Positions 1 through 61,393 of a stretch of 64,000 bases of DNA are shown piece by piece. Position 1 is the stretch's first letter, and the number at the start of each line of letters is the position of its first letter. The notes beneath the pieces were generated by a model, which saw only the letters and a program-made list of their open reading frames with translations, did not search any database and had not been told where the DNA came from. The position numbers and the translations under genes were made by a program. The stretch is from positions 207,824,001 to 207,888,000 of the forward strand of contig NW_027362767.1 in the NCBI RefSeq assembly GCF_046119375.1, given 5' to 3'. Source of the stretch: Phyllobates terribilis. Taxonomy: Eukaryota.

Positions 1-360
1 TTTTTGTGTTCATGTTTGCATACAGAGCGGTGACCCCCAGATCTGCCTCTGTACAGACGATCGTCGCTCATTAATGGTGCAGAGATCAGCGGGGACGTGA
101 GCTCCGAGTCTGCAGGAGACATAATGCCTCCGGGATGACACCGGTCCCGCGGCACACCGCCCCGCACCACACCAGCCATTACCGATCACTGCACCCTTAC
201 ACTTGGCCGTTGTCGCTGTACTCCGTCATTATTCGTTTCTTATAATAACCAATAGAAAACAAGAGCAAAGCTCGTACATGCAAAGGGTTAATCAGCGCTA
301 GATGGCAACGACCTGATCATGAATACGCTGCACCTCCCGAATCATTAAAGGTCTGAACGG

Positions 361-2647
361 CCCACAGATAACGGGAGAGGGGGGGACACAGCGCCCACAG
401 ATAACGGGAGAGGGGGGGGGGGGACGTACAGCGCCCACAGATAACGGGAGAGGGGGGGGGGGGCCACAGCGCCCACAGATAACGGGAGAGGGGGGGGGGG
501 GAGGTACAGCGCCCACAGATAACGGGAGGGGGGGGGGGGAGGTACAGCGCCCACAGATAACGGGAGAGGGGGGGGGAGGTACAGCGCCCACAGATAACGG
601 GAGAGGGGGGGGGGGAGGTACAGCGCCCACAGATAATGGGAGAGGGGGGGGGGGAGGTACAGCGCCCACAGATAACGGGAGAGGGGGGGGGGGGAGGTAC
701 AGCGCCCACAGATAACGGGAGGGGGGGGGGGGGAGGTACAGCGCCCACAGATAACGGGAGAGGGGGGTACAGCGCCCACAGATAACGGCAGGGGGAGGGG
801 GGGGGGAGGTACAGCGCCCACAGATAACGGGAGAGGGGGGGGTACAGCGCCCACAGATAACGGGAGGGAGGGGGACACAGCGCGCACAGATAACGGCAGG
901 GGGAGGGGGGGGGGGTACAGCGCCCACAGATAACGGGAGAGGGGGGGACACAGCGCGCACAGATAACGGCAGGGGGAGGGGGGAGGTACAGCGCCCACAG
1001 ATAACGGGAGAGGGGGGGACACAGCGCGCACAGATAACGGGAGAGGGGGGGACACAGCGCGCACAGATAACGGGAGAAGGGGGGACACAGCGCGCACAGA
1101 TAACGGGAGGGGGGGAGGTACAGCGCCCACAGATAACGGGAGAGGGGGGGCCACAGCGCCCACAGATAACGGGAGAGGGGGGGCCACAGCGCCCACAGAT
1201 AACGGGAGAGGGGGGGCCACAGCGCCCACAGATAACGGGAGAGGGGGGGGTACAGCGCCCACAGATAACGGGAGAGGGGGGGGGGAGAGGTACAGCACCC
1301 ACAGATAACGGGAGAGGGGGGGACACAGCGCGCACAGATGCCGGGAGAGGGGGGGGGGGACACAGCGCGCACAGATGCCGGGAGAGGGGGGGGGGGGGAC
1401 ACAGCGCGCACAGATGCCGGGAGAGGGGGGGGGACACAGCGCGCACAGATGCCGGGAGAGGGGGGGGGACACAGCGCGCACAGATGCCGGGAGAGGGGGG
1501 GGGGGGGGGACACAGCGCGCACAGATGCCGGGAGAGGGGGGGGGGGGGGACACAGCGCGCACAGATGCCGGGAGAGGGGGGGGGGGGACACAGCGCGCAC
1601 AGATGCCGGGAGAGGGGGGGGGGGGGACACAGCGCGCACAGATGCCGGGAGAGGGGGGGGGGGGGACACAGCGCGCACAGATGCCGGGAGAGGGGGGGGG
1701 GGGGGACACAGCGCGCACAGATGCCGGGAGAGGGGGGGGGGGGACACAGCGCGCACAGATGCCGGGAGAGGGGGGGGGGGACACAGCGCGCACAGATGCC
1801 GGGAGAGGGGGGGGGACACAGCGCGCACAGATGCCGGGAGAGGGGGGGGACGGGACACAGCGCGCACAGATGCCGGGAGAGGGGGGGGACGGGACACAGC
1901 GCGCACAGATGCCGGGAGAGGGGGGGGACGGGACACAGCGCGCACAGATGCCGGGAGAGGGGGGGGACGGGACACAGCGCGCACAGATGCCGGGAGAGGG
2001 GGGGGACGGGACACAGCGCGCACAGATGCCGGGAGAGGGGGGGGACGGGACACAGCGCGCACAGATGCCGGGAGAGGGGGGGGGGGACACAGCGCGCACA
2101 GATAACGGGAGAGGGGGGGGACACAGCGCGCACAGATAACGGGAGAGGGGGGGGACACAGCGCGCACAGATAACGGGAGAGGGGGGGACACAGCGCGCAC
2201 AGATGCCGGGAGAGGGGGGGGACACAGCGCGCACAGATGCCGGGAGAGGGGGGGACACAGCGCGCACAGATGCCGGGAGAGGGGGGGACACAGCGCGCAC
2301 AGATGCCGGGAGAGGGGGGGGACACAGCACGCACAGATGCCGGGAGAGGGGGGGACACAGCGCGCACAGATGCCGGGAGAGGGGGGGGACACAGCACGCA
2401 CAGATGCCGGGAGAGGGGGGGACACAGCACGCACAGATAACGGGAGAGGGGGGGGACACAGCGCGCACAGATAACGGGAGAGGGGGGGGGGACACAGCGC
2501 GCACAGATGCCGGGAGAGGGGGGGACACAGCACGCACAGATGCCGGGAGAGGGGGGGACACAGCGCGCACAGATAACGGGAGAGGGGGGGACACAGCGCG
2601 CACAGATGCCGGGAGAGGGGGGGGGGACACAGCGCGCACAGATGCCG
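361..2647. repeat. GC-rich minisatellite (VNTR) in mpp1 intron 1, unit ~31-40 bp, roughly 65-70 copies
   Basis: Units CAGCGC(C/G)CACAGAT(AAC/GCC)GGGAGAG(G)n(GTA/ACA) with a variable-length G run. This array explains the 710-824 aa ORFs in the track. Confidence 0.97.
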
Positions 2648-2665
2648 GCTGTCCTCCCCCTGTAC

Positions 2666-2791
2666 CTGGGTCGCCGCCCGGTTCTGCAGCAGGGTCTCCA
2701 GGTAGAGATCGGACAGAGCGGACCTCATGCTCGGGCTGTCGCAGCGGCTGATTTCTCGGCTGATTTCTGAGCGCTCGAACTTCAGCGTCAT
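2666..2791 (-). CDS. mpp1: MPP1 (p55, MAGUK scaffold protein 1) first coding exon, 42 codons, phase-0 donor
   Basis: Translates [42 protein letters not shown], matching the recalled human MPP1 N-terminus MTLK...[22 protein letters not shown]. It is followed by the donor CAG|GTACAG at 2665, at the position where I recall human exon 1 ending. Kozak context GAGACATG. Confidence 0.85.
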
Positions 2792-3350
2792 GTCTCCGCC
2801 GTGTCCTCAGGAAGCTGCTCTCCCTCTGTCCGGTCCCGGCTCCTTCCTTCCCGTCTTCCTCTCCTCCTCCTCAGCCTCCTGCCCTCTCCCCTCTTTATCT
2901 CCGCAGAACAGGCTGACTCAGGAAAGCAGGGCAATAGCGATAATGCCTCTGCGCGGCCGGCACACTGCGCAGGTCAGGGAGTCCCCGCGCTCAGCCCCGC
3001 TCCCTGCCCCCGCACATTGCGTCTTTCCGCACACACGTCTCCGTGTCGCTATACCCCGCGCTGCGGTATCACGCCGCCCTCCGCAGAGCCGCCGGGACGG
3101 ATAATGCCGGGGCTCAGCACGTCACAGCGCCGTTATCACACCCCCGGGATGTGAGATGGTACGGCCGGGGTCACATGACCGTCCCTGGAAACGGTCATGT
3201 GATGACAGAGCTCTTGGTGGAAACACGGTCATGTGACGCAGGGGGAGGGGTTGTGTGAGTGACGTCAGCAGCTGGTCTGCGATAAACAAGGGGGTGTGAG
3301 AGTGACCAGCACAGTGCGGCCGCTCCTCACACTGCTGCGCCTCCACAGAC
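2792..3350 (-). promoter_or_regulatory. CpG-rich 5'UTR and promoter of mpp1
   Basis: High CpG density directly upstream of the ATG. GTCACATGAC at 3170, GTCATGTGA at 3194 and 3228, TGACGTCA at 3260, AGATAA (minus strand) near 2894. Confidence 0.7.
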
Positions 3351-3356
3351 CTTACT

Positions 3357-3798
3357 TAAAGGGGTTGTCCATGTTTTCTTACTTTTTTATTTTATTCCAC
3401 AGGCTTATTCTATATGAAGTGAGTGTCCCCAAAAAAGCACTAGTAAGAAAAGTGCAGCACTAGAAGTATAACATTGTCCTGGACCGGCTTAAAGGGGCCG
3501 TCTGTCCAAAACCAAGAGGCATTAGAGCAGCCCCATCCTCTGTGTGCCCAGGCAGGAAGCCATGATGTCACTGTCCCACTAGCCTGTGATTGTCTGCAGT
3601 GGTCAGACGACTACATCAGTATGAAACATCCGATGACACACTGCTCAAGTCATCTGACCGCTGCAGCCAGTCACAGGCTAGTGGGACAGTGACATCACCA
3701 CTTCCTGTCCAGACCACGGAGCTGCCGGTGGGTGACTACGGCATTTTACATTTCTCGTCCTGTGGGCAGTTTTGTGGTTTTCCCTGGTGTCCCCCTAA
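3357..3798. mobile_element. Degenerate TTAA-type (T2/Kolobok-like) MITE with internal hairpin
   Basis: Left end TTAA-AGGGGTTGTCC; ~50-bp inverted arms at 3564-3611 and 3649-3696; right end CCCCCTAA. Confidence 0.45.
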
Positions 3799-4324
3799 AG
3801 GGTTTTACGTCTAATTGTAACATGTTCCGGTCTCACAGTGACGCTAAGAAAACGTTCAATAAAATCTGTAAAAAATATAAATGAAAAACATTCACTTAAT
3901 TAGTGTCGCCCCCTTCTGACCGGCCTGTGCTATAAAACGGTCACACTAACCAGTGTGGTGAACGGCATGCAGAAAACTAAAAACTAAAACCCACCCCTGG
4001 AATACTTTATTTTCTCATTATACTACCGCATATATTTTTTTATAAAAAGCAATTAAAAAGCCGTGTGTAAAGAAAGACGGCATCGCTGAGAACAAGTCAT
4101 CCTGCAAGAAACCGCTCTCAGCAGACAAATCTAACAGTTACAGCTCTCAAAATATCATGAAAACGTTTTTTTTTTTTAGCGTGAAAAGTAGCAAAACATA
4201 AATCTGCTGTCTATAATCGTACAGATCCGAAGAATAAAGTCGCCTTATCACTTATATCGCATGGTGTTCAGAAAAGCAACAAACAAAAAAACTTTTGCTC
4301 ATTCTGCCGCCCACAAGTCAGTCG

Positions 4325-4647
4325 GGGCTCATTCAGACGTCCGTTTTTTTCATAAAACCGGTCGAAGTTTCATCAGTTTTTCTCTGATAGGAAACAACAA
4401 ATAAAAAGGTTTATCTGTCTGCTTTCTCCTATCCAGCAGTGTGTGAATAACGGACGGCGTCCGAGTGCTGTCTGTTCTTTATTTTTCCCCGGACCCATAG
4501 ACCTGCATTGCCCCTTTTTATCTGACACTCAGATCAATATCAGACATGTGAACAGCCCCATAGACCGCTGCCACTAATACCAGGTACGATTTCTTGCCTT
4601 GAAAAACACAGAATTTGTACGTGAAAAACGGATGTGTGAACGAGCCC
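4325..4647. mobile_element. PIF/Harbinger-like MITE
   Basis: TIRs GGGCTCATTCAGACGTCCGTTTTT and AAAAACGGATGTGTGAACGAGCCC, right flank TTA. Confidence 0.6.
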
Positions 4648-6001
4648 TTAGGTTCACATTCATCTGGTGCTCTACGCTAAACATTCACATCACAGTTTCT
4701 ATCTGAATCCATCAGGCCCTTGTCCATTTTATTTACGCATGCCCAGCAGTGGGGTCAACAACTGTTTTGCACATGCCTAAAAAGATGGGACAGTGCCAGA
4801 ACAGAGGCCACATGGAGTCCATAGTGATTCCACCTGCCTCAGAGCCAATGGTATTGTCGGGGGATCCAGAAACCCCGAAGTGCTGAGCATAGAACACGAG
4901 ATAAATGTGAATCTAGACTTAAATGCATTCCAGAATGTTATATGCTCCAAAATAAGAACTTCAACTCGTCTTCCAAAGAACAAGCCTCCACTCAGGTCCG
5001 TCACCTGTCAACTTAAAAATACAGGGTCTCCGTGTTACCAGTAGCTCACAGGCCATGGGAAAGCATCAGTGTCTCCCAAAAATAAGTCCAGCAAAATCCG
5101 TGCTTCCAAAGCCAAATGCTCTTCTTTCCTCTGTTCTGAAACCCACTGTGCCAAAACAGCAGTTGGCATCCACATGTAGCGGGAGAATCCTCTTAACTGG
5201 TTTCTGGGTTCATGTCTCAAATATTCAAGCTAATTCCCTGGCCATTCCGATGGCTGGTCATTTAGGGATCAATAAGACCAAGGCCAGGCTAGCCCAGCAT
5301 TTCTACTGGCCACGGATGGGGGCCGGTAGGTGGCTGCCTGTCATGTGACACCTGTTAGAGGGTGTGGAAGGTCGGGCGGCATCCCAAAGCCCCACTGGTA
5401 ACTCTGCCCATCATTGAAGAGCTTTTCAGGAGGGTGGCTGTGGATTTGGTGGGCCCGATAGTCACTCCCAGCAGCTCTGGGAAACGTTTCATACTGACGG
5501 TAGTAGACTATGCCACCCGGTACCCGGAAGCTGTAGTCTTGTCGTCCATTCGGGCCGACAAGGTGGCCATCGCCTTACTGGAGATTTTCTCCTGAGTGGG
5601 TTTTCCCCAGGAAATGCTCACCAACCGGGGAACCCAGTTCATGTCACAGCTGATGGAGTCCCTCTGTAAGCAAATACAGGTGCAACATCTGGTGACCAGC
5701 CCGTTCCACCCACAGACCAACCGCCTGTGCAAACGGTTCAATGGCACCCTGAAGCAGATGCTTAAGATGTTGGTAGACTCCCACGGGCGCGACTGGGAAC
5801 GGTACCTCCCATACCTGCTACCTGCCTACCGGGAGGTTCCGTCGGCCTCAACGGTGTTCTCCCACTTTGAGCTCCTGTACGGCCGGCGTGCATGGGGCCC
5901 CCTGGCTCTGGAGAAGGAGGTCTGGGAAGGGGACTTAGCCAGCCCTGGAGTGTTGGTCATTGAATATGTTGTGCGCTTCCGTGACAAAATGCAGGCCTTG
6001 G

Positions 6002-16552: not shown

Positions 16553-17265
16553 AGTAGTGTGACCAAGTTGTCAAGCACTTTCCAAGTGATGCTAAAATCG
16601 CTTGGAAAGCACATGTCAATCCGCATGCGGAAATGCATGTGAAGAACGCTTCACATCCGCATGTCCCTGGCAGAAAAACGCATGTACAATCTGCATGTAC
16701 AATCCGCATGTACAATCCGCATACACAATCCACATGTACAATCCACATGTACAATCCACATGTACAATCCGCATATACAATCCACATGTACAATCCTCAT
16801 GTACAATCCACATGTACAATCCACATGTACAATCCGCATGTACAATCCACATGTACAATCCTCATGTACAATCCACATGTACAATCCGCATGTACAATCC
16901 ACATGTACAATCCGCATGTACAATCCACATGTACAATCCACATGTACAATCCACATGTACAATCCGCATGTACAATCCACATGTACAATCCACATGTACA
17001 ATCCGCATGTACAATCCGCATGTACAATCCGCATGTACAATCCACATGTACAATCCACATGTACAATCCACATGTACAATCCACATGTACAATCCGCATG
17101 TACAATCCACATGTACAATCCTCATGTACAATCCACATGTACAATCCGCATGTACAATCCACATGTACAATCCTCATGTACAATCCTCATGCGTTTTTTC
17201 TGCCAGGGAGATGCAGAAACACTCAGGAAAAATCCGGAGCATTTCTGCATCGTGGGCACTTAGCC
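16553..17265 (-). mobile_element. Family H Harbinger-like MITE (one end) with expanded 13-bp minisatellite
   Basis: Reverse complement of 9187-9430; TIR GCATCGTGGGCACTTAGCC|TAA. Confidence 0.85.
16681..17190. repeat. ~39 x 13-bp minisatellite CATGTACAATCC(A/G/T)
   Basis: Direct reading; source of the HMYNPHVQSTCT ORFs. Confidence 0.97.
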
Positions 17266-17326
17266 TAAAGGTTACAGATTGTAATAGGCATGTTGGGCAG
17301 TGCCCCTTTAACAAAAATATAACTAT

Positions 17327-30290: not shown

Positions 30291-30503
30291 ACAACAGCTC
30301 ACAAAAAAACCCACAAAAAAAATTATACTCACCTAATCCAGCCTAAGCAGAGTCGCAGTTTAAGTGGCCCATGGATGGACCAGCCCATCTGGCGTTAGCC
30401 AGAATCGCCAGATGGCCAGTCCGGCAATGTTTCAGTATATGGTTCCTTCAGGGGTTTTGTCTGTATTCTCCTTTCCAGAGATTTAGGCAGAAACCCAGAG
30501 GTG

Positions 30504-32093
30504 CAGTGGGGAAAATAAGCATTTGATACACTGCCGATTTTGCAAGTTTTCCCACCTACAAAGAATGGAGAGATCTGTAATTTTTATAGTGCGTTCACTT
30601 CAACTGTGAGAGACAGAATCTAAAAATAAGATTTAGAAAATCACATTGTAAGATTTTTTCATAACTAAATTGCATTTTATTGTATGAAATCAGTATTTCA
30701 TCACCTACCAACCAGCAAGAATTTTGGCTCTCACAGACCTGTTAGGTTTTCTTTAAGAAACCCTCCTACTCTACACTAATTAACTGTAATAATTGTACCT
30801 GTTTGAACTCTTTACCTGTATAAAAGACACCTGTCCACACACTCAATCAATCACACTCAAACCTCTTCACCATGGCCAAGACCAAAGAGCTGTCTAAGGA
30901 CACCATGGACAAAATTGTAGACCTGCACAGGGGTGGGATGGGCTACAGGACAATAGGCAAGCAGCTTGGTGAGAAGGCAACAACTGTTGTCACAATTATT
31001 AGAAAATGGAAAAAACACAATATGACCATCAATCTTCCTCGGTTTGGGGCTCCATGCAAGATCTCTCCTTGTGGGGTAAGGATGATTCTGGAAATGGTCA
31101 GGAATCAGCCCAGAACTACATGGGAGGACCTGGTAAATGACCTGAAGAGAGCTGGGACCACGGTCTCAAACATTACTGTTAGTAACACACTACGCCGTCA
31201 TGGATTAAAATCCTGCAGGGCACGCAAGTTCCCCCTACTCATGCCAGCACATGTCCAGGCCTGTTTGAAGTTCGCCAATGACTATCCATCAAAGGAGGCA
31301 TGAGAGAAGGTCATGTGGTCGGATGAGACCAAAATAGAACTTTTTGGTATCAAGTCCACTCGCCGTATTTGGAGGAAGAAGGATGAGTACAACCCCAAGA
31401 ACACCATCCAAACCATGAAACATGGTGGGGGAAATATCATTCTTTGTGGGTGCTTTTCTGCAAAGGGGACAAGATGACTGCACCGTATTGAAGGGAGAAT
31501 GGATGGGGTCATGTATCGCGAGATTTTGGCCAACAACCTCCTTCCCTCAGTAAGAGCATTGAAGATGTGTCATGGTTGGGTTTTCCAGCATAACAATGAC
31601 CCGAAACACACAGCCAGGGCAGCTAAGGAGTGGCTACGTAAGAAGTATTCCAAGGTCCTGGAGTAGCCTAGCCAGTCTCCAGACCTGAACCCAGTAGAAA
31701 ATCTTTGGAGGGAGCTGAAACTCCATGTTGCCCAGTGACAGCCTCAAAACCTGAAAGATCTGGAGAAGATCTGTATGGAGGAGTGGGCCAAAATCCCTGC
31801 TGCAGTGTGTGCAAACCTGGTCAAGAGATACAGGAAACGTCTGACCTCTGTAATTGCAAACAAAGGTTTCTGGACCAAATATTAAGTTCTGTTTTTCTAT
31901 TGTATCAAATACTTATTTTATGAAATAAAATGCAAATTAATTATGTAAAAATCATACAATGGGATTTTCTGGATTTTATTTTTAGATTCTGTCTCTCACA
32001 GGTGAAGTGACCTACGACAAAAATTACAGATCTCTCCATTCTTTGTAGGTGGGAAAACTTTCAAAATACATCAAATACTGATTTTCCCCACTG
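30504..32093 (+). mobile_element. Full-length Tc1 element, ~200-bp TIRs, dead DD34E transposase (30872-31885)
   Basis: CAGTGGGGAAAAT ... TTTTCCCCACTG|TA; MAKTKELS.., [15 protein letters not shown](N)NDPKH, SPDLNPVENLW; several in-frame stops. Confidence 0.95.
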
Positions 32094-32189
32094 TACAGCC
32101 AGACACTGCACAGTTAAAGTATATAAATTGAGGTACTATCAAAAACATACAATTGTACACCCACAAAGGACAAAGTATGCAGATATACA

Positions 32190-34229: not shown

Positions 34230-34939
34230 GGTGAAGGAAGAGGGATCGTGAAGGCACGTGAAGATCATCTGACTATTGGCACTCCCAGAGAATATTTATT
34301 AGCTTCACTGCCCCTCCATCAGAAAGCCATGAGATTCCTGGCAGATACCTTGGCAGAATCAGCAAAAATAGCTGCAAGATCATCAGGTTTGTCAAACTCA
34401 ATGAGATGATCTCTTTGGCTTAAGTCATGGAATGAGGATGTGAATTCTAAAGTCAAGCTTTACTCCATTACTTTCCAATGAGAATATATGTTTGGTCCAG
34501 TAGATGATTTACTGGAGAAAGCACCGGATAAGAAGAAATCCTTGCCTGAACCAAGTGTTTTCAGAAGAAAAGCCTTTAGTCACTCACAAAATCAACCTCT
34601 CCAGTACATGGGAAAAGGGAAATCGGTAGACTGGAGTTACCCCAAAGGTGGAAAGGGCAGAAACATTTTACTGGGTCCGAACCAGCTACAAGACAGACAA
34701 TGATGCCAGAGCGATAGGAGGATGTATCTTAAGATTCCTTTCCCAATGGTGGAAAATTTTCTCAGATCGGATGGTCTTGGAATCCATCAAACAGGGAATA
34801 AAAATAGAGTTCTTCTACTCCCCTACAGTGCCTTAAGGTACCTTGCCTTTCATCCCATAAGTTACAAAACGCCCTAATATTCGGTCTCCAGGATAGCCTA
34901 TCTTCAGGAGAAATATCTCCAGTTTCAGAGAGAGAATGC

Positions 34940-35240
34940 CCAGGAAAGATGGTGGTCAGCAGCACTTACTGCAAGGGGCGCACGTCCATAATCCTCAAGG
35001 AACCCACTCGAGGAAATATCAGCATACAAAAGTAAAAGTCAGCGTCCATACCAGGGTGTTCAATTGCAAAAGAGATGTTTATTCCACCATCCCAAAACAC
35101 ACAACATTTCGACCCTGTGTAGGTCTTTGTCAAGTACTTGACAAAGACCCACACAGGGTCAAAACGTTGTGTGTTTTGGGATGGCGGAATAAACACCTCT
35201 TTTGCAATTGAACACCCTGGCATGGACGCTGTCTTTTATG
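34940..35240. mobile_element. 301-bp insert with fold-back, probable Penelope-like terminal remnant
   Basis: 15-bp TSD TCAGAGAGAGAATGC at 34925-34939 and 35241-35255; palindrome at 35033-35238. Confidence 0.7.
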
Positions 35241-36262
35241 TCAGAGAGAGAATGCGTCAGAAGTCATTATTCTTGCCTGTTTCTTGCAAAGAAACCAAGC
35301 GGATCTTACAGGATAATCATAAACCTAAAACCTCTAAACCATCACATCCCCTACAGAAGGTTCAAACTGGAGTCCATAAAATCTACCACCCCACTGATAG
35401 CGAAAAACTTTGTCATGGCAACCATCGACTTGCAGGGCGCATATTATCATGTCCCCATTCATCCAGTGTACCGAAAATTCTTGAGATTTGTAGTTACCCA
35501 GGGACAAGAAATGCTGCACTTCCAGTTCAATGTCATGTCCTTTGGAATTTCATCAGCACTGCAGGTGTTTAAGAAAATCATGGCAGAAGTAATGGCATTC
35601 ATCAGGAAACAGAAAATCATCATTCCTTATTTTGACGATTTCCTGTTTATGGCTACTTCTGTATCGTTGCTCAGAGAACACCCACAGAGAACTCTTCAAA
35701 TTCTAACATCCCTAGGATGGCTGGTGAATCCTCAGAAATTGGACTTAGGTCTTCCTGGTAGAAGAGACTTTCTAGATATCTTATTGGACTCTTAAAAACA
35801 GACATACTTTTTACCAAAAGACAAATTCAGATAAGATCCAGAATAGATGTTCTACAAAATCAGAAGACCTTGCCCTTAAGGTTCGCGATGTTGGTCCTAG
35901 GGTCTATGACTTCATGCATTCGAGCAGTAGTCTGGACTCAGGCCCATTCAAGAGTTCTACAGACATTCGCCCTCTCCTATTGGGACAGATCCCCCAAATC
36001 CATGAACAGGAGAGTTTCCTAGACCGGTCGGGTGAAGACTTCACTCACCTTGTGGCTAAGTCCAGGGAAATTAGAGAAAGGAATGCCCTGGGTACAGAAT
36101 CCTCTGACAACTGTTACAATGGACATGCCATGGTCTCCCAGATTTATTTCCAAGAGATCTGAGCTCAGGACGTAAGTCTTCGATCATCCAATTTCAGGGA
36201 ATTGAAGGCAATAGAGGAGACCCTCAGAGCTGCAATGACCTTAATACAAACGACTCATGTAA

Positions 36263-37120
36263 GGGTATGTGCACACGATGCAGAAATGCTCCGGATTTTT
36301 TCCTGAGCATTTCTGCATCTCCCTGGCAGGAAAAAACACATGCGGATTGTACATGCGGATTGTACATGCGGTTTCCTGCCAGGGACATGCGGAAATGAAG
36401 CGGTCTTCACTTTCATCTCCACATGCGGGTTGACAAGCGATTTTAGCATCACTTGGAAAGTGCTTGTCAACTTCACACTATATAAATCCATGCAACCAGC
36501 ATGGATTTATATAGTGTGTGAATGTCAAAAAATAAAAAATAAATATATACTTTACCCTCTGATGGCCCCCGGTATCCTGCTTCGCTTGGTCCCGGCTACC
36601 GGCAGTGAAGACTGAAGGACCTGCCGACGTCAGCGTCACGTGACCTGTCACATGACTCTGACGTCAGCAAAGGTCCTTCTTCATTCAACCGAGAAGTGCC
36701 GGGAACCAAGCAGGAGCTCTGCGCGGGCCGTCAGAAGGTGAGTATATATATATTTTTTATTTTATTCTTTTTTTTTTAATGGTACCTGGGTCTGGATGAG
36801 AGTCCTCTCCTCCACACCCGGGTACCATCCGCACATTAGACCACATGAAAAACGCATCAACATATACAGTGATGCGGATTCCATGCGGTCTAATGCAAGT
36901 CAATGGCGCCAAAAAAGCAGCGTTTCCGCAAAATTAATTGACATGCTGCGGATTTTTGAGCGCAGCGTTTACGCTGCGGAAAAATCCGCATCATGGGCAC
37001 AGCACATGCGGATTTTAATTGGGGAACATTGCTGCCCTTCTACCATGCGTTTTTCATGCGTTTCCGCAACTGCAAAAACGCAGCGGAAACGCATTAAAAA
37101 CGCATCGTGTGAACTCAGCC
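36263..37120 (+). mobile_element. Family H Harbinger-like MITE in DIRS RNase H
   Basis: TAA|GGGTATGTGCACACGATGC ... GCATCGTGTGAACTCAGCC|TAA; highly similar to 9187-9982; removal restores TTHV|KVYS. Confidence 0.9.
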
Positions 37121-45535: not shown

Positions 45536-46235
45536 TTTTCAGCACCTATTCTCCCTCCTTTGAAGTATTACGGCTCAGGAAGTCTGACTTGATGTTTTCC
45601 TTTCCTTTTAAGTGTAAGGTAGTAAGGGAGAGTAAATGACTTTCTGCCTTCTGTAACAGCTTGTCCACAACTTTCATAAGATTTTTTTGACTTGGTACCC
45701 CCTTGGTGATTTATATAAGCCACGGAAACCCGGTTGTCCGATAGCACCCTGACGTCCTGGCCCTGTAGAGATAGAAGGAACCCGCTTACTGCCTGATCCA
45801 CTGCCAACAGTTCTTTAACATTAGAGGGGAATTTTTTCTCTTCCTCCGTCCAAACTCCCTGGACTATTTTACTGTCTAGATGGGCTCCCCAACCCGTGGG
45901 ACTTGCGTCTGTGGTTAAAACATGGGTTGGATTTACCTCCCAGGTGACCCCCCTGGACAGGTTCTCTCTATCCAGACACCATCGATGGGATTGTGTCGAG
46001 CGAGGGGATAAGGTTAATTTACCTTCAAGATGCACACCCAGGGTTGACTCATTATATAGCACTTCCCACTGAAGAGCTCTAGGGTGGAACTGGGTCCATA
46101 AGACTGAGGGGAAACGGAACATTAAGGTGCCTAATAAAGACATTGTCTTTCGAAGAATCATGGAGGGTTTATGTATGGCTTCGTTCACCTGATGCTGAAT
46201 CATTTTAACTTTCAAGGCTGGCAGCTGTTACACCT

Positions 46236-53919: not shown

Positions 53920-55850
53920 TTCCAGGATGGGAACATATATACCAGGATGAGGGACATATATACCACGATTGGGAACATATATACACGGATAGGGAACATA
54001 TATACCAAGATGGGGAACATATATACTAGGAAGTGGCCCAGAATGGGGGATATATATGACAAGAAGGGGCCCATAATGGGGATCATACAGTATATAGCAG
54101 GATGGTGGACATATAGGTGCTTCTCACAAAAGTAGAATATCATCAAAAATTTAGTTTATTTCAGTTCTTCTATACAAAAAGTGAAACTCCTATATTATAT
54201 AGAGTCATTACAAACAGAGTGATCTATTTCAAGTGTTTATTTCTGTTAATGTTGATGATTATGGCTTACAGCCAATGAAAACACAAAAGTCATTATCTCA
54301 GTAAATTAGAATACTTTATAACAACAGCTTGAAAAATGTTTTTAAAATCCAAAATGTTAGCCTACTGAAATGTATGTTCAGTAAATGCCCTCAATACTTG
54401 GTCGGGGCTCCTTTTGCATCAAATACTGCATCAATGCGGCAATGTGGCATGGAGGCGTTCAGCCTGTGGCACCGCTGAGGTGTTATGGAAGCCCAGGTGG
54501 CTTTGATAGCAGCCTTCAGCTCGTCTGCATTGTTGGGTCTGGTGTCTCTCGTCTTCCTCTTGACAATACCCCATAGATTCTGTATGGGGTTAAGGTCAGG
54601 CGAGTTTGCTGGCCGATCAAGCACAGTGATACTGTTGTTTTTAAACCAGGTATTGGCACCTGTCCACACTGCCAAAAGTACCAAGTCCTTCTGGAGAATA
54701 AAATTTCCATCTCCAAAAAGCTTGTCGGCAGAGGGAAGCCTGAAGTACTCTAACATTTCCTGGTAGACGGCTGCGCTGACTTTGGTCTTGATAAAACGCA
54801 GTGGACCTACACCAGCAGATGACATGGCTCCCCAAACCATCACTGATTGTGGAAACTTCACACTAGACCTCAAGCAGCTTGGATTGTGGCCTCTCCACTC
54901 TTCCTCCAGACTCTGGGACCTTGATTTCCAAAATAAATGCAAAATTTATTTTTATCTGAAAACAACACCTTGGACCACTGAGATCAGTCCAGGACTTTTT
55001 CTCCTTGACCCAGGTAAGACGCTTCTGGCGTTGTCTATTGGTCATGAGTGGCTTGATACAAGGAATGCGACACTTGTAGCCCATGTCCTGGATACGTCTG
55101 TGTGTGGTGGCTCTTGAAGCAATGACTCCAGCAGCAGTCCACTCCTTGTGAATCTCCCCCAAATTTTTGAATGGCCTTTTCTTAACAATCCTTTCAAGGC
55201 TGCGGTTATCCCGGTGGCTTGTGCACATTTTTCTACCACACTTTTTCCTTCCACGTCCATTAATATGCTTGGATACAGCACTCTGCGAACCGCCAGCTTC
55301 TTTAGCAATGACCTTTTGTGGCTTACCCTCCTTGTGGAGTGTGTCAATGACTGCCTTCTGGACATCTGTCAAGTCAGCAGTCTTCCCCATGATTGTGGAG
55401 CCTACTGAAAGGAACCTTTTTAAACACTTAGGAAGCCTTTGCTGTTGTTTTTTGTTAATTATTCTAATTTACTGAGATAATGACTTTTGTGTTTTCATTG
55501 GCTGTAAGCCATAATCATCAACATTAACAGAAATAAACACATGAAATAGATCACTCTGTGTGTAATGACTCTCTATAATATATGAGTTTCACTTTTTGTA
55601 TTGAAGAACTGAAATAAATTAAATTTGTGATGATATTCTAATTTTGGGAGAAGCACCTGTATATACTGTACCAGGATGGGGGAGATTTATACTAGGATTG
55701 AGAACATATACTGTATACCAGGATGGGTAACATCTTTACCAGAATGGGGAACATATATACCAGGATGGGTCTATAATGGGGACATTTTAACCAGGAAGGG
55801 ACCCGGGATGAGGTACATTAATACAGGATGGGGGACATTACTACATAATG
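53920..55850. repeat. ~21-bp minisatellite TATACCAGGATGGGGAACATA, split by a Tc1 insertion
   Basis: Units at 53920-54113 and 55660-55850. Confidence 0.8.
54114..55659 (-). mobile_element. Full-length Tc1 element, dead transposase (55390 down to 54391)
   Basis: TA|(C>T)AGGTGCTTCTCACAAAA ... TTTTGGGAGAAGCACCTG|TA; MGKTADLT.., VMVWGAMS, NSPDLNPIQNLW; frameshifted. Confidence 0.95.
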
Positions 55851-56399: not shown

Positions 56400-59300
56400 T
56401 GTTATGATCTGCTACAGAGACTAAGGAAAGGCAGGAGATCTGTCCCTACAATAGAACTAAACTAGATCCCTACGATGTAACGGGGAACCTGATCCTGCGA
56501 TCAGACCCGCTAAAGTCCTCGGCTAGTCTGAACGCAGACCTATAGATGTGGGGGAGGGATCCCTACAAGATCTAGGGACTGGGACAAGTTGGACACCTCC
56601 TAGCAGAAATAGTAGCAGTCAAAGACAAACACACAACAAAAAGCATAGAGGTCCGAAGACCTAGCAAAACTAACAGAGAACGGCAATAGAGCAACAAGCT
56701 AGCTCAACAGTAGTAAATACAAATGAAGTCCAGCAATGCCAGGAGGGCGGAGCCGGATTAAATAGGCAAAATGGTCATGTGACCAGCAAACTAAAAAAAA
56801 CCTAACAGGAGAGTTGTAACAGTACCCCCTCTTCTAAGAGGATCCTCCGGATCCCCTAGGCCCAGGCTTACCAGGAAACCTCCTGTGAAACGCTCGGACA
56901 AGTCTAGGGGCAGAAACATCATCCGCCCTCACCCATGAGTTATCCTCAGGTCCGAAACCCTTCCAAGCGACGAGATACTGCAAACTCCCTCTATACCGTC
57001 TAGAATTTAGGATGCGGGAAATTTCATATTCCCCGTCCTCCACCACCGGAGGAACAGTGGCAGAGGCGTCACCATCCGACACATCAGCTTTTTTCAACAG
57101 AGAAACATGAAACACCGGATTAATCCTCCAGGACGTAGGAACCTCCAGCCTAACAGCAGATTGGTTAACTATCTGAAGTACCTTAAAGGGCCCTACGAAC
57201 TTGGGACCCAATTTTTTAGAAGGAATCCTCAATCGCAGATTCTTAGAGGACAACCAAACCATGTCACCAACAGTAAACAAAACCTCTTGCCGTTTCCTAT
57301 CAAAGTACCTCTTAGATTTTTTGTTAGCCTCTTGAAGATTACCACGCACATCCGTCCAAACTCTCTCCAAATCACCGGAAAAACTCTCCTCCTCAGGCAC
57401 AGCCGAAACCAATTTGGAGAATGACCCAAAAGACGGATGTCTCCCAGAACAACAAAAAAAAGGCGAACACCCAGCAGAAGAGGATGTATGGTTGTTAAGA
57501 GCAAATTCAGCAAGTGGCAGAAACTCAGACCACCCCTCTTGATTGTCTGCCACAAAACAACGCAAGAACTGCTCAACATCCTGGTTCTTCCTTTCTGTCT
57601 GGCCATTAGACTCAGGATGATATCCGGATGAAAACGACAAATGAACTCCCAACCTGTCACAAAAGGCACGCCAAAAACGAGCCACAAACTGAGGTCCCCT
57701 ATCAGAAACAATGTCAGTAGGAACACCATGTAGTCTGACAATTTCCTTGACAAAGGCCTTGGCGAGTGTCTTAGCGCAAGGTAGTTTGATGAAGGGAACC
57801 AAGTGACACATTTTGCTAAAACGGTCCACGACCACCCAGATGACCGTGAAACCTTCAGAGGGAGGAAGGTCAGTAATAAAGTCCATAGCCAGATGTGTCC
57901 AAGGTGCACTAGGAACCTCCAGAGGGCAAAGCAACCCCGCAGCAGGAGCATGCGAAGACTTGGATCTAGCACACACAGTACATTGGCACACCCACTTAAT
58001 GACTTCCTTCTGCCATCCAGGCCACCAAAAACTGCGACCCACAAGTCTCTTGGTCTCAGAAATTCCTGGATGACCTGCCAACCGAGACTCATGACACTCA
58101 ACAAACAAATCTCTCCTAAAGGTCCTAGGCACAAACAACCTCCCATGGGGAGTGTTAGATGGGGCATTCTCCTGAGCTTTAAGAATCTCATCCTCCAAAA
58201 CGGAGTCCAAAGCAGCAATCACAACACCTTCTTGTAAAATGCTCTCCTCTTCCTCCTCAACACCGACCATGGGAGAAAAGCTGCGAGACAAAGCATCCGC
58301 TTTAACATTCTTGGTACCCGGGATGTAAGTAACGGAAAAATTAAACCGCGAAAAAAAAAGTGCCCACCTAGCCTGACGGGCATTCAAGCGCTTGGCAGCA
58401 TCAAGATAGATCAGATTTTTATGATCAGTGAAAACCTGAACGGGAAATTCAGCACCTTCCAAGAGATGACGCCAGTGTTCAAATGCGAGTTTAATCGCCA
58501 GCAATTCCCGATTACCAATATCGTAATTAAGTTCAGTCTCGGAAAATTTTTTTGAAAAAAAGGCACAGGGATGTACTCCATCCTTGTTTTCCTGAGACAA
58601 CACCGCACCAACCCCCACCGAAGAAGCATCAACCTCAACCAAAAACGGCTTAGTCACATCAGGCTGCATAAGGATGGGAGCAGAGGTGAACCTCTCCTTT
58701 AGAAACACAAAAGCTTCAGTGGCCTCAGAAGACCACTGAACCGCATTAGCACCTTTCCTGGTGAGATCGGTCAGCGGTTTGACAATAATAGAAATTTTTT
58801 TATGAATTTTCTGTAATAATTGGCGAAACCCAAAAACCTCTGTATCGATTTCAAACCAATAGGCCCAGGCCATTCCTGCACAGCTTGAACTTTAACCGGG
58901 TCCATCTCCAAACCCTCACTGGAGACAATGTAGCCCAAAAAACTAATTCTCTGTACAGCGAACTCACATTTCTCCAGCTTAGCAAAAAGCGAATTGTCCA
59001 TTAATAACTGTAATACCTCACGTACGCTCCGCCAATGAGACTCCAGATCCGGCGAATAAATCAAAATGTCATCCAAATACACCACCACATCTTTGCCGAT
59101 TAAAGGTCTAAGGATGTCATTAATCAGATTCTGAAAAAATGCTGGAGCATTAGTAAGACCAAAAGGCATAACCAGATTCTCAAAATGACCCACAGGAGTG
59201 TTAAAAGCAGTCTTCCATTCATCACCCTCCTTCATGCGCAATAAATTGTATGCCCCCCGGAGATCAATTTTAGAGAACCACTTGCCCCCACTAACTGGTT

Positions 59301-61393
59301 AAATAAATCGGGAATCAATGGCAGTGGGTAAGGATTGCGTACAGTAATTTTATTAATCTCACGAAAGTCCAGACAAGGACGTAAACCGCCATCTTTTTTT
59401 TTCACAAAAAAAAAAACCAACAGCCACAGGAGACTTAGAAGGCCTAATGTGACCAGCGGCCAAGCTTGTCTGTATGTATTCCTCCAAAGCCTTTCTCTCA
59501 GGAATAGTAAGATTAAATAAACGACTCTTAGGAAGAGTCGCTCCAGGGACAAATTCAATGGTACAATCATAGTCTCTATGGGGAGGCAAAATTTGTGACT
59601 CCTCCTCAGAAAAAACTCTCCAAAAATCCTGAATAGGTACAGGCAATTCCCCTTTACCCACAGCAGCAATACGTCCGTTACAACACTTGTCATAACACTT
59701 AGGGCTCCAGGACTTAATTTCATTGGTAGACCAATCCAGTACAGGATTGTGCAATTTCAACCAGGGTAACCCCAATATTACTGGAGAAGGCAAATTATCC
59801 AATACCACCAAATCCAAATTCTCTTGGTGAATACCATTAATAGTGAGGGGAAATTCACAGACCTTGTGAGTAACACTCTTCAAGGGAGAGCCATCGACAG
59901 AAACCACAGCAATAGGGGATGACAAAGTTTTAGGTTCTAATCTAAGTTTTTCCAAGAATCCCCCATCAATCACATTCAGAGTAGATCCACAATCCACAAA
60001 TACCCGAAATTCAATTAATTCATCCTGAGTAGTGGCAGATAGGAATACCCCCTTAGAATTTAAACAGGCAATACGGGCATGACTGACCATTTTTTTTTCT
60101 TTCTTCTTACGAAGCACACAGCTCTTAATAAAATGACCAGAGCTTCCGCAATAGAAACACAAGCCTTCAGAAAGTCGGCAGTCTTTTTCCTGAGAGCGGG
60201 GTGCCATCGCCCCAATTTCCATCGGCTCTCCATTGTCAGCACAGAACCTCTCAGGACTCGAAGCTGACATAGCAGAGGATTTGCTCTCATTAACCCTTGC
60301 ACGCAGTCTCCTGTCCACCCGTATAGCTAATTGCATTGCCTCCTGCAAGTTTCCAGGTGTGGGATAAGCAATCAGTAAATCCTTAACCCTTTCACCTAGC
60401 CCTGCCAGAAACAAGCTTTTCAAAGCTGAATCGTTCCACCCTACCTGGGCAGACCACCGACGGAAGTGAGAACAATATTTTTCCACCTTACCTGATCCCT
60501 GCCTCAAACGTCTTAATTCAGACTCAGCAGATGAGACACGATCAGGATCATCGTACAACAAACCCAAAGCAGAAAAAAAACTATCCACTGATCTAAAGCA
60601 CGGATCACTAGGTTGGAGAGAGAAGGCCCATCCCTGAGGATCTTTGCGCAAAAGTGAGATTATGAACCCTATGCGCTGTGATTCATCACCAGAGGATCCG
60701 GGTCTCAAATGAAAATATAATAGACAAGCATTTTTAAAAGAAAAAAAATCTTGTTGTTCGCCAAAAAATAGATCAGACAGACGTACCTTTGGTTCCACAA
60801 AATGCGCTCCAGAACAGCTACTCACGTGTTGTTGGAGCTTGGTCACCTCCAGAGAGAGTCCCTGCAAGCTTTGAGCCAAATCTTGCACCGAGATCATGAT
60901 GGAAAACTGGAGCTGGAGGTCTTTCCCCAGAGAAAATCCTTTCCTTTTTTTTTTTTTATGGCTGGACTTACTGTTATGATCTGCTACAGAGACTAAGGAA
61001 AGGCAGGAGATCTGTCCCTACAATAGAACTAAACTAGATCCCTACGATGTAACGGGGAACCTGATCCTGCGATCAGACCCGCTAAAGTCCTCGGCTAGTC
61101 TGAACGCAGACCTATAGATGTGGGGGAGGGATCCCTACAAGATCTAGGGACTGGGAAAAGTTGGACACCTCCTAGCAGAAATAGTAGCAGTCAAAGACAA
61201 ACACACAGCAAAAAGCATAGAGGTCCGAAGACCTAGCAAAACTAACAGAGAATGGCAACAGAGCACCAAGCTAGCTCAAGAGTAGTAAATACAAATGAAG
61301 TCCAGCAAAGCCAGGAGGGAGGAGCCGGATTAAATAGGCAAAATGGTCATGTGACCAGCAAACTAAAAAAAACCTAACAGGAGAGTTGTAACA
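56400..61393 (-). mobile_element. Full-length chromodomain Gypsy (Tf1/sushi-like) LTR retrotransposon
   Basis: 422-bp LTRs at 56400-56821 and 60972-61393 with about 8 substitutions; TG...CA; perfect 5-bp TSD GCCGG; PPT AGAAGAGGGGG. Confidence 0.97.
56834..60897 (-). CDS. Gag-Pol polyprotein (Gag, CCHC, protease, RT, RNase H, integrase, chromodomain) broken by three single-base indels
   Basis: [14 protein letters not shown]; FVDCGS; YLDDILIYS; [12 protein letters not shown]; [14 protein letters not shown]; [22 protein letters not shown]; KFVGPF; [25 protein letters not shown]. Confidence 0.93.

What the first reader, a model, noticed from the sequence alone, without database searches (positions are those of the whole stretch)
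34925..35255. Fold-back of two hammerhead-like cores inserted with a 15-bp TSD
Seen: a 301-bp insert in DIRS RT flanked by a perfect 15-bp duplication. It contains a loop-less 206-bp palindrome (35033-35238, centre CAAGT|ACTTG). Each arm reads TTGACAA-A-GACC(C/T)-ACACA-GGGTC-(G/A)AAA-(C/T)GTT, then AATAAA about 20 nt later. The arms differ at CpG-type changes, so the consensus is TTGACAAAGACCCACACAGGGTCGAAACGTT. Established: the hammerhead core is CUGANGA-stemII-GAAA, with U3:A8 as the compensatory variant. Minimal type-I hammerheads with a palindromic helix III occur in Penelope-like element terminal repeats, and those elements often have inverted terminal segments. Inference: a small, possibly independently mobile ribozyme-bearing unit (retrozyme-like) inserted by target-primed reverse transcription. 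The + arm has G12A and is predicted inactive.
Basis: partly seen in the sequence, partly recalled or inferred. Interest (0 to 1): 0.7.

Follow-up and report, generated by a model that had tools for sequence, protein, structure and literature searches.

The report
Dead fold-back Penelope-type hammerhead repeat copy
A 301-base piece of a very abundant frog repeat, carrying the mini hammerhead ribozyme motif typical of Penelope-like jumping genes, landed inside another dead retroelement and folded back on itself; it is a real but ordinary, inert relic of a known kind.

Summary
A 301-bp insert (34940-35240) is flanked by a perfect 15-bp duplication and contains a spacer-less 206-bp palindrome. Removing 316 nt puts the host reverse-transcriptase reading frame back in phase. 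Two paralogous host copies in public runs lack the insert.

The insert belongs to a high-copy family. Contig depth is about 12-40 in the flanks and 500-5000 in the insert, changing exactly at its borders.

Each arm matches the published descriptor of the Penelope-like-element (PLE) minimal hammerhead, in its U3-A8 core variant (PMC4209133), with one deviation per arm. These were the only two matches in the window, against none in 38 Mb of shuffles. The family's majority letters restore G12 and a stem II pair.

- Insertion by target-primed reverse transcription of a PLE-type unit fits.
- "Retrozyme-like" is untested: there is no tandem copy, no RNA evidence and no PLE gene in the window.
- The two cores lie on opposite strands, so they cannot dimerise in one transcript. 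A 100-bp hairpin out-competes the ribozyme fold.
- Rfam finds no hammerhead.

Unchecked earlier notes of this scan report the same kind of motif and fold-back elsewhere in this genome. It is a new member of a known kind and of low interest.

The parts
34925..34939 (.). Left copy of the 15-bp target-site duplication. In the host frame it reads S-E-R-E-C.
34940..35135 (-). Long arm: 196 nt of the repeat unit in minus orientation. Its 3' end is at 34940 and its 5' end is at the palindrome centre.
   Evidence: depth rises at 34940, and 5 contigs with unrelated flanks end there..
35103..35133 (-). Minimal hammerhead motif on the minus strand. It has core UUGACAA (U3-A8), a bulged A, a 5-bp stem II with one U-G pair, GAAA, then UGU-U. 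All core bases are present, and 15.2/16.2 is a U-G wobble.
35136..35238 (+). Short inverted arm: unit positions 1-103 in plus orientation, joined head to head to the long arm with no spacer.
35138..35168 (+). Minimal hammerhead motif on the plus strand, with G12 changed to A at 35161. The family majority there is G.
35239..35240 (.). Two filler bases (TG) between the short arm and the target.
35241..35255 (.). Right copy of the 15-bp target-site duplication, in the same codon phase as the left copy.
34808..34924 (+). Host retroelement open frame running up to the left TSD copy and the insertion point.
35256..35792 (+). Host retroelement reverse-transcriptase domain (RVT_1), continuing the interrupted frame.

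Best explanation
The insert is one dead copy of a high-copy, non-coding frog repeat whose 5' part carries a Penelope-like-element (PLE) type minimal hammerhead motif with the U3-A8 core pair.

An RNA of this family, in the sense of the window's minus strand, was copied into a staggered break inside the RT gene of another, already decaying retroelement. The mechanism was target-primed reverse transcription. It left a 15-bp target-site duplication, no poly(A), and the family's usual 3' terminus at 34940.

At the 5' end of the copy, 2 nt upstream of the hammerhead core, a second, inverted 103-nt copy of the same 5' part was attached head to head. This happened in one of two ways. Either the reverse transcriptase switched onto its own nascent cDNA, or a second cDNA was primed from the other target strand, as the Anolis PLE protein can do in vitro.

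This produced the spacer-less palindrome. The two arms have since diverged by 7 substitutions.

At this locus the element does nothing as a ribozyme. Each strand has only one sense motif, the + one has lost G12, and any transcript across the centre folds into a roughly 100-bp hairpin.

Shown: the insertion, the TSD, the repeat family, the motif match and the hairpin. Inferred: PLE machinery as the mobiliser, the way the fold-back arose, and ribozyme activity of the family's source copies.
For: - TSD and palindrome.
- Empty sites: paralogous host contigs go from 34823 to 35242 with 101 letters between, and from 34813 to 35280 with 153 between. A single TSD copy and no insert predicts 102 and 150.
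- Host frame: the SEREC codons are in phase on both sides, and RVT_1 lies just downstream.
- Repeat family: depth is about 12-40 in the flanks and 500-5000 in the insert, with sharp borders, in three DNA runs from two studies. Loose ends with unrelated flanks lie at 34940.
- Motif: with one deviation allowed, my descriptor hits only the two arms in the window and nothing in 300 dinucleotide shuffles, 38.4 Mb in all.
- Published hallmarks that are present: a bulged base between positions 9 and 10.1, the G10.1-C11.1 pair, palindromic 15.2-16.2, and the U3-A8 covariant (PMC4209133).
- Family majority letters at 35161 and 35121 restore G12 and the stem II C-G pair.
- Several single-copy contigs join inverted unit pieces head to head at other, unequal truncation points, for example 35010|35205 and 34992|35208 with short fillers. 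This fits the PLE habit of an inverted truncated copy at the 5' end and a variable TSD length (PMC8557442).
- The Anolis PLE protein cleaves and extends both target strands and initiates reverse transcription internally (PMC11167929).
- Hairpin: -183.8 kcal/mol, z -20.6.
Against: - Rfam hammerhead models do not match, even at E up to 10. However, they model a real helix III, which minimal motifs lack.
- Helix I is poor: 2 Watson-Crick and 2 G-U pairs, and only in the palindrome context.
- H17 is U (GUU), not the usual C.
- Nearest-neighbour energies prefer another fold over the hammerhead-type dimer: -26.8 against -20.1 kcal/mol for the + arm, and -21.7 against -11.2 for the - arm.
- There is no PLE RT/GIY-YIG gene in the window.
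- No other copy could be fetched, so stem covariation across copies was not tested.
- The inverted arm is truncated at its 3' side (it stops at unit position 103), whereas the literature describes 5'-truncated inverted copies.
- The head-to-head joints in other contigs rest on short sides of 26-39 nt at 80% likeness.
Confidence: 0.75

Rival explanations
1. The family is an ordinary SINE-like or LINE-mobilised repeat. The hammerhead resemblance is fortuitous, and the fold-back is a generic snap-back of reverse transcription.
For: No Rfam hammerhead hit. Helix I is weak and the fold energy of a single arm is unremarkable (z -0.25 and -1.0). An alternative fold is more stable. A 15-bp TSD also fits L1-type insertion.
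Against: The descriptor match is far beyond chance: 0 hits in 38.4 Mb of shuffles and none elsewhere in the window. It includes features not forced by the core boxes, namely the bulge, G10.1-C11.1 and palindromic 15.2-16.2. The family majority restores the motif. There is no poly(A) or 3' microsatellite, and no tRNA-like part.
Confidence: 0.12
2. The family is a true non-LTR retrozyme: tandem units that self-cleave, circularise and are copied by PLE enzymes. This insert would be a solo offspring of such circles.
For: Vertebrate retrozymes, Xenopus included, are reported as non-autonomous derivatives of PLE pseudo-LTRs with many solo monomers (bioRxiv 10.64898/2026.07.22.740005). The family here is short, non-coding and high-copy.
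Against: There is no tandem direct repeat at this locus. No head-to-tail joint appears among the joints listed. The RNA-labelled run has no contig on the insert. The copy's 5' end is not at the predicted cleavage site.
Confidence: 0.1
3. The insert is a DNA transposon of the fold-back or MITE type, or an assembly artefact.
For: It contains a long palindrome, and palindromes are a known source of mis-assembly.
Against: The insert's own termini are not inverted repeats of each other. A 15-bp TSD is atypical for cut-and-paste elements. Both junctions are crossed by zero-mismatch contigs from independent runs.
Confidence: 0.03

Closest known systems
Minimal hammerhead motifs of Penelope-like elements (Cervera and De la Pena 2014, PMC4209133)
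   Same: Both are type I with no real helix III. Both have a palindromic 15.2-16.2 (A-CG-U), a bulged base before stem II, and the G10.1-C11.1 pair. The U3-A8 covariant is the one described for Schistosoma Cercyon. Both occur massively as lone or oppositely oriented pairs 100-700 bp apart. About 9000 such motifs are reported in Xenopus tropicalis.
   Different: Stem II here is 5 bp, against 7-8 bp in the Schistosoma families. H17 is U. Helix I is only 2+2 pairs at this locus. No link to a PLE ORF or pseudo-LTR could be shown here.
PLE insertion architecture (Craig et al. 2021, PMC8557442; Anolis PAc in vitro, PMC11167929)
   Same: Variable-length TSD, no poly(A), heavy truncation, and an inverted copy abutting the 5' end of the main copy. 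The PLE enzyme nicks and extends both target strands.
   Different: Here the inverted copy reaches the same 5' end as the main copy and stops at unit position 103. This gives a perfect spacer-less palindrome rather than a 5'-truncated inverted copy. No 30-40-bp tail was recognised.
Non-LTR retrozymes of animals (PMC7229834; bioRxiv 10.64898/2026.07.22.740005)
   Same: Short non-coding units with a type I hammerhead, related to PLE pseudo-LTRs, with many dispersed monomers.
   Different: The defining tandem direct arrangement and circular RNA were not seen. This copy is inverted, not tandem.
L1 5' inversions by twin priming
   Same: An inverted 5' segment next to a forward 3' segment, within one TSD-flanked insertion.
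   Different: Twin priming gives adjacent, non-overlapping segments of one RNA (from my own knowledge of the model). Here the two arms are the same 103 nt.

Membership tests
PLE-type minimal hammerhead (min-HHR) | Core boxes CUGANGA (or the U3-A8 covariant), then GAAA, then U16.1 and H17 | tested here: met
   UUGACAA ... GAAA ... GU-U on the minus arm. The plus arm has AAAA (G12A), but the family majority there is G.
PLE-type minimal hammerhead (min-HHR) | Unpaired base between positions 9 and 10.1, and a G10.1-C11.1 pair closing stem II | tested here: met
   Bulged A, then GACCC/GGGUC, 5 bp. Criteria from PMC4209133.
PLE-type minimal hammerhead (min-HHR) | Palindromic 15.2-16.2 that allows a dimeric helix III | tested here: met
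   ACGU on the plus arm. AUGU (wobble) on the minus arm.
PLE-type minimal hammerhead (min-HHR) | Helix I of about 4-5 bp flanking the core and the cut site | tested here: inconclusive
   2 Watson-Crick and 2 G-U pairs, formed with the other arm. The upstream sequence of other copies is known only as a 30-nt loose-end consensus.
PLE-type minimal hammerhead (min-HHR) | Compensatory changes in the stems across family copies | not testable with these tools
   There is no other copy in the window or in the searchable collections. The contig sequences behind one search are not returned.
PLE-type minimal hammerhead (min-HHR) | Location in the pseudo-LTR of an element encoding RT plus GIY-YIG | not testable with these tools
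   No such ORF among the ten largest ORFs of the window that were scanned against Pfam.
PLE-type minimal hammerhead (min-HHR) | Self-cleavage (as a dimer) | not testable with these tools
   This needs a bench assay. In silico, the hammerhead-type dimer is less stable than the minimum-free-energy fold.
Rfam hammerhead families (canonical type I, II, III, HH9, HH10) | Match to a covariance model | tested here: not met
   No hammerhead hit at E up to 10 in 34600-35600, and none at gathering score in the window.
Non-LTR retrozyme | Two or more tandem direct units, each with a hammerhead | tested here: not met
   Only an inverted pair is present and there is no direct repeat of the unit. No head-to-tail joint is listed.
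Non-LTR retrozyme | Unit-length circular RNA | tested here: inconclusive
   The one RNA-labelled run (X9) has no contig on the insert. Contigs lose small RNAs.
DIRS retroelement (host of the insertion) | RT/RNase H together with a tyrosine recombinase and DIRS-type terminal repeats | tested here: inconclusive
   RVT_1 was found, with an RNase H-like lead. No recombinase domain was found in the scanned + strand segments between 32944 and 37821. The homology search was blank.

The most novel reading that the evidence does not exclude
Both arms stop at the same base, 2 nt upstream of the hammerhead core. This may mark the true 5' end of the family's template RNA. The spacer-less palindrome would then be the footprint of two cDNAs primed from both target strands by a dimeric PLE particle holding two RNAs, perhaps paired through their hammerheads. 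A genome-wide catalogue of such head-to-head junctions would then give a direct readout of the still unknown way PLEs make their inverted repeats. The resulting 100-bp hairpins could also be a steady source of small RNAs against the family.
Probability: 0.12. Interest if true: 0.55.

Novelty: new member of a known kind. Interest (0 to 1): 0.22.

Why it matters
It matters little on its own. It is one more decayed copy of the hammerhead-bearing repeats that Penelope-like elements have spread through amphibian genomes, and the U3-A8 core swap was published in 2014.

Its modest value is as a clean, well-bounded example of a PLE-type head-to-head insertion. It has a TSD, empty-site paralogs, a restored host frame and an exact palindrome. 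With many such cases, it could help to work out how these elements build their inverted repeats. It is also a reminder that such palindromes will read as miRNA-like hairpins in RNA-family scans.

Tried and rejected
- Rfam, by E-value on the 1-kb region and by gathering score on the whole window: only hairpin-driven miRNA and snoRNA look-alikes below threshold, and no hammerhead.
- Other copies in the window: none.
- Pattern scans for other copies: the core pattern was scanned in metagenome and viral contigs, and a 20-mer of the unit in metagenome and prokaryote-genome contigs. The core pattern gave nothing. The 20-mer gave 7 loci that share only those 20-23 bases, so they are chance matches.
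- Literature search for the motif sequence: none found. The supplements of two papers had no matching sequence or were not held. Lunse et al. 2017 is not held.
- tRNA-derived SINE: no tRNA-like part.
- Host classification as DIRS: Pfam on nine further frame pieces, a homology search and two atlas searches gave only RT and an RNase H-like lead.
- The "opposite strands" joints 35101|35177 and 35035|35232 looked at first like other fold-backs. I rejected this. Arm A on the + strand and arm B on the - strand are the same sequence, so these are alignment switches between the arms.
- The loose ends at 35235 are the unit's own continuation, not a second shared terminus.
- I built no consensus of the element. 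Only the majority letters reported at single positions are used.

Full report
**What is there**

- The 15-mer TCAGAGAGAGAATGC stands at 34925-34939 and again at 35241-35255. It is the only direct repeat that the repeat finder reports in 34500-35700.
- Between the two copies lie 301 bp (34940-35240).
- Inside them, 35033-35135 and 35136-35238 are reverse complements of each other: 103 nt each, 93% complementary, with no base between the arms.
- The left arm continues outward as unique sequence to 34940. The right arm is followed by two bases (TG) and then the second 15-mer.
- The arms differ at 7 positions. Six are transitions and one is a transversion.

**It is a genuine insertion**

Three independent lines support this.
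- Host reading frame. The frame arriving at the left 15-mer and the frame leaving the right 15-mer both read it as the codons S-E-R-E-C. Taking out 316 nt therefore puts the two halves back in phase. The downstream half then runs into a reverse-transcriptase domain (RVT_1, E 6.7e-18).
- Empty sites in paralogs. Contigs of public DNA runs of the same species were laid on 34500-35700. They include diverged paralogs of the host element that pass from 34823 to 35242 with 101 letters between, and from 34813 to 35280 with 153 between. An empty site with a single 15-mer predicts 102 and 150.
- Junction support. Zero-mismatch contigs from two different studies cross the left junction (34500-34969) and the right junction (35209-35700). 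The structure is therefore not an assembly artefact.

I could not confirm that the host is a DIRS element. Only the RT and an RNase H-like lead were found.

**It belongs to a high-copy family**

- In three DNA runs the summed contig depth is about 12-40 over the host flanks and 500-5000 over the insert. The change falls exactly at 34940 and at about 35238. This figure is not a copy number, but it shows a family repeated very many times.
- Five contigs with unrelated flanks stop exactly at 34940, so that is a family terminus.
- Where this copy differs from the family majority, the majority letter is the one found in the other arm (35039, 35075, 35121, 35161). The arm differences are therefore private mutations.
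- Several single-copy contigs join inverted pieces of the unit head to head at other, unequal positions with short fillers. Examples are 35010|35205, 34992|35208 and 35046|35136.
- A fixed end at 34940 and variable inner ends are what target-primed reverse transcription with 5' truncation gives. This sets the RNA sense to the minus strand for the long arm, which is the sense of the hammerhead-like motif.
- No other copy lies in the window. None could be fetched from the metagenome, viral or prokaryote collections.

**The hammerhead reading**

Cervera and De la Pena (PMC4209133) defined the minimal hammerhead of Penelope-like elements (PLEs). It has the core boxes and no real helix III. It has a palindromic 15.2-16.2 for dimer formation, a conserved extra base between positions 9 and 10.1, a G10.1-C11.1 pair and a helix I of 4-5 bp. 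They also report a natural U3-A8 covariant, about 9000 motifs in Xenopus tropicalis, and pairs on opposite strands 100-700 bp apart.

Both arms here read:
- UUGACAA (U3-A8), then a bulged A;
- a 5-bp stem II closed by G-C;
- GAAA (AAAA in the + arm);
- then N-G-U-U (CGUU in the + arm, UGUU in the - arm).

I wrote that descriptor as a script.
- The strict form finds nothing in the window or in shuffles.
- With one deviation allowed, it finds exactly the two arms (35138-35168 on +, 35103-35133 on -). It finds nothing in 300 dinucleotide-preserving shuffles of the window, 38.4 Mb in all.
- The family majority restores G12 (35161) and the C-G pair in stem II (35121). The source sequence therefore fitted the strict descriptor at those positions.

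This goes well beyond chance and matches a published kind.

**What speaks against an active ribozyme**

- Rfam's hammerhead models give no match, even at E up to 10. Those models expect a real helix III.
- Helix I is only two Watson-Crick and two G-U pairs, and it is formed with the opposite arm.
- The cleavage triplet is GUU, not GUC.
- Secondary-structure energies prefer another fold, in which the loop II bases (ACACA) pair with the UGUGU run after the cut site. That fold beats a hammerhead-type dimer by -26.8 against -20.1 kcal/mol for the + arm and -21.7 against -11.2 for the - arm.
- Single arms do not fold better than shuffles.
- At this locus activity is excluded for simpler reasons.
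 - The two motifs are on opposite strands, so a transcript carries one sense motif and one antisense copy.
 - The + motif has lost G12.
 - As soon as the other arm is present, the core and stem II are absorbed into the long hairpin. The whole insert folds at -183.8 kcal/mol, z -20.6.
- The miRNA-like Rfam scores below threshold come from that hairpin.

**How the fold-back arose (inference)**

PLE insertions are known for variable TSD length, heavy truncation, partial tandems and an inverted copy abutting the 5' end (PMC8557442). The purified Anolis PLE protein nicks and extends both target strands and starts reverse transcription internally (PMC11167929). Two routes fit the structure here.
- Route 1: the first cDNA, primed at 34939, reached the template's end at 35135. 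It then switched onto itself or onto another cDNA and copied back 103 nt.
- Route 2: a second cDNA was primed from the other target strand at unit position 103 of a second RNA. It ran to the same 5' end, and the two were joined.

The unequal head-to-head joints seen in other contigs favour route 2 as a general habit of the family. The exact symmetry here fits either route.

One difference from the textbook picture is that the inverted copy here is cut at its 3' side, not its 5' side.

**Unresolved**

Eleven to thirteen contigs per run leave the reference just left of the centre. They share a loose 30-nt consensus with agreement of about 0.6. This may be the parent element's sequence upstream of the hammerhead, and it would offer a 5-bp helix I. 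I could not check it.

**Comparison and verdict**

The element works like, and most probably is, a member of the PLE minimal-hammerhead repeats.
- The sequence-level defining features were tested and met.
- Helix I is inconclusive.
- Linkage to a PLE gene, covariation across copies and cleavage could not be tested.
- It is not shown to be a retrozyme. There are no tandem units, and the one RNA-labelled run has no contig on the insert.

Unchecked notes from this scan report the same kind of thing elsewhere in this genome, which one of them calls a poison frog. They describe many U3-A8 Penelope-type hammerheads and several TSD-flanked fold-backs with back-to-back motifs. My tests agree with those notes but did not examine their loci.

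It is an ordinary relic: a new member of a known kind.

Noticed in passing
window 56834-60897 (- strand): Two long open frames of a chromovirus-type LTR retrotransposon. One is 512 aa with gag and aspartyl protease. The other is 679 aa with RNase H, integrase and a chromodomain. Both look largely intact.
   Followed up: partly
window 30501-32096: A fragment of a Tc1/mariner (Sleeping Beauty-like) transposase with its HTH domains at 30872-31303. It is flanked by an inverted pair, 30501-30701 and 31904-32096, at 84% identity, which are probably its terminal inverted repeats.
   Followed up: no
window 16555-17266: A long tandem array with a 13-bp period, seen as a ladder of BLAST hits. It shares a 37-bp stretch with host-element sequence near 36340. 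The ORFs across it give spurious repeat-domain hits.
   Followed up: no
window 298-2791 (- strand): Three overlapping ORFs of 710-824 aa in all three frames of one strand, with a proline-rich FH1-like hit below threshold. This looks like low-complexity sequence and not a gene.
   Followed up: no
window 35033-35238: At five of the seven arm differences the minus-sense copy of the left arm has T where the right arm has C. At 35039, 35075, 35121 and 35161 the family majority letter shows three private changes in the left arm and one in the right. The skew is too small to test.
   Followed up: partly
window 35135/35136 (contigs): Eleven to thirteen contigs per run diverge from the reference just left of the palindrome centre. 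They share a partly conserved 30-nt upstream sequence. It may be the parent element's leader, and it would give the hammerhead a 5-bp helix I.
   Followed up: no
window 54391-54942 and 45568-46215 (- strand): Further transposable-element debris: a DDE_3 transposase fragment and an RT-RNase H fragment. The whole window is a nest of dead mobile elements.
   Followed up: no
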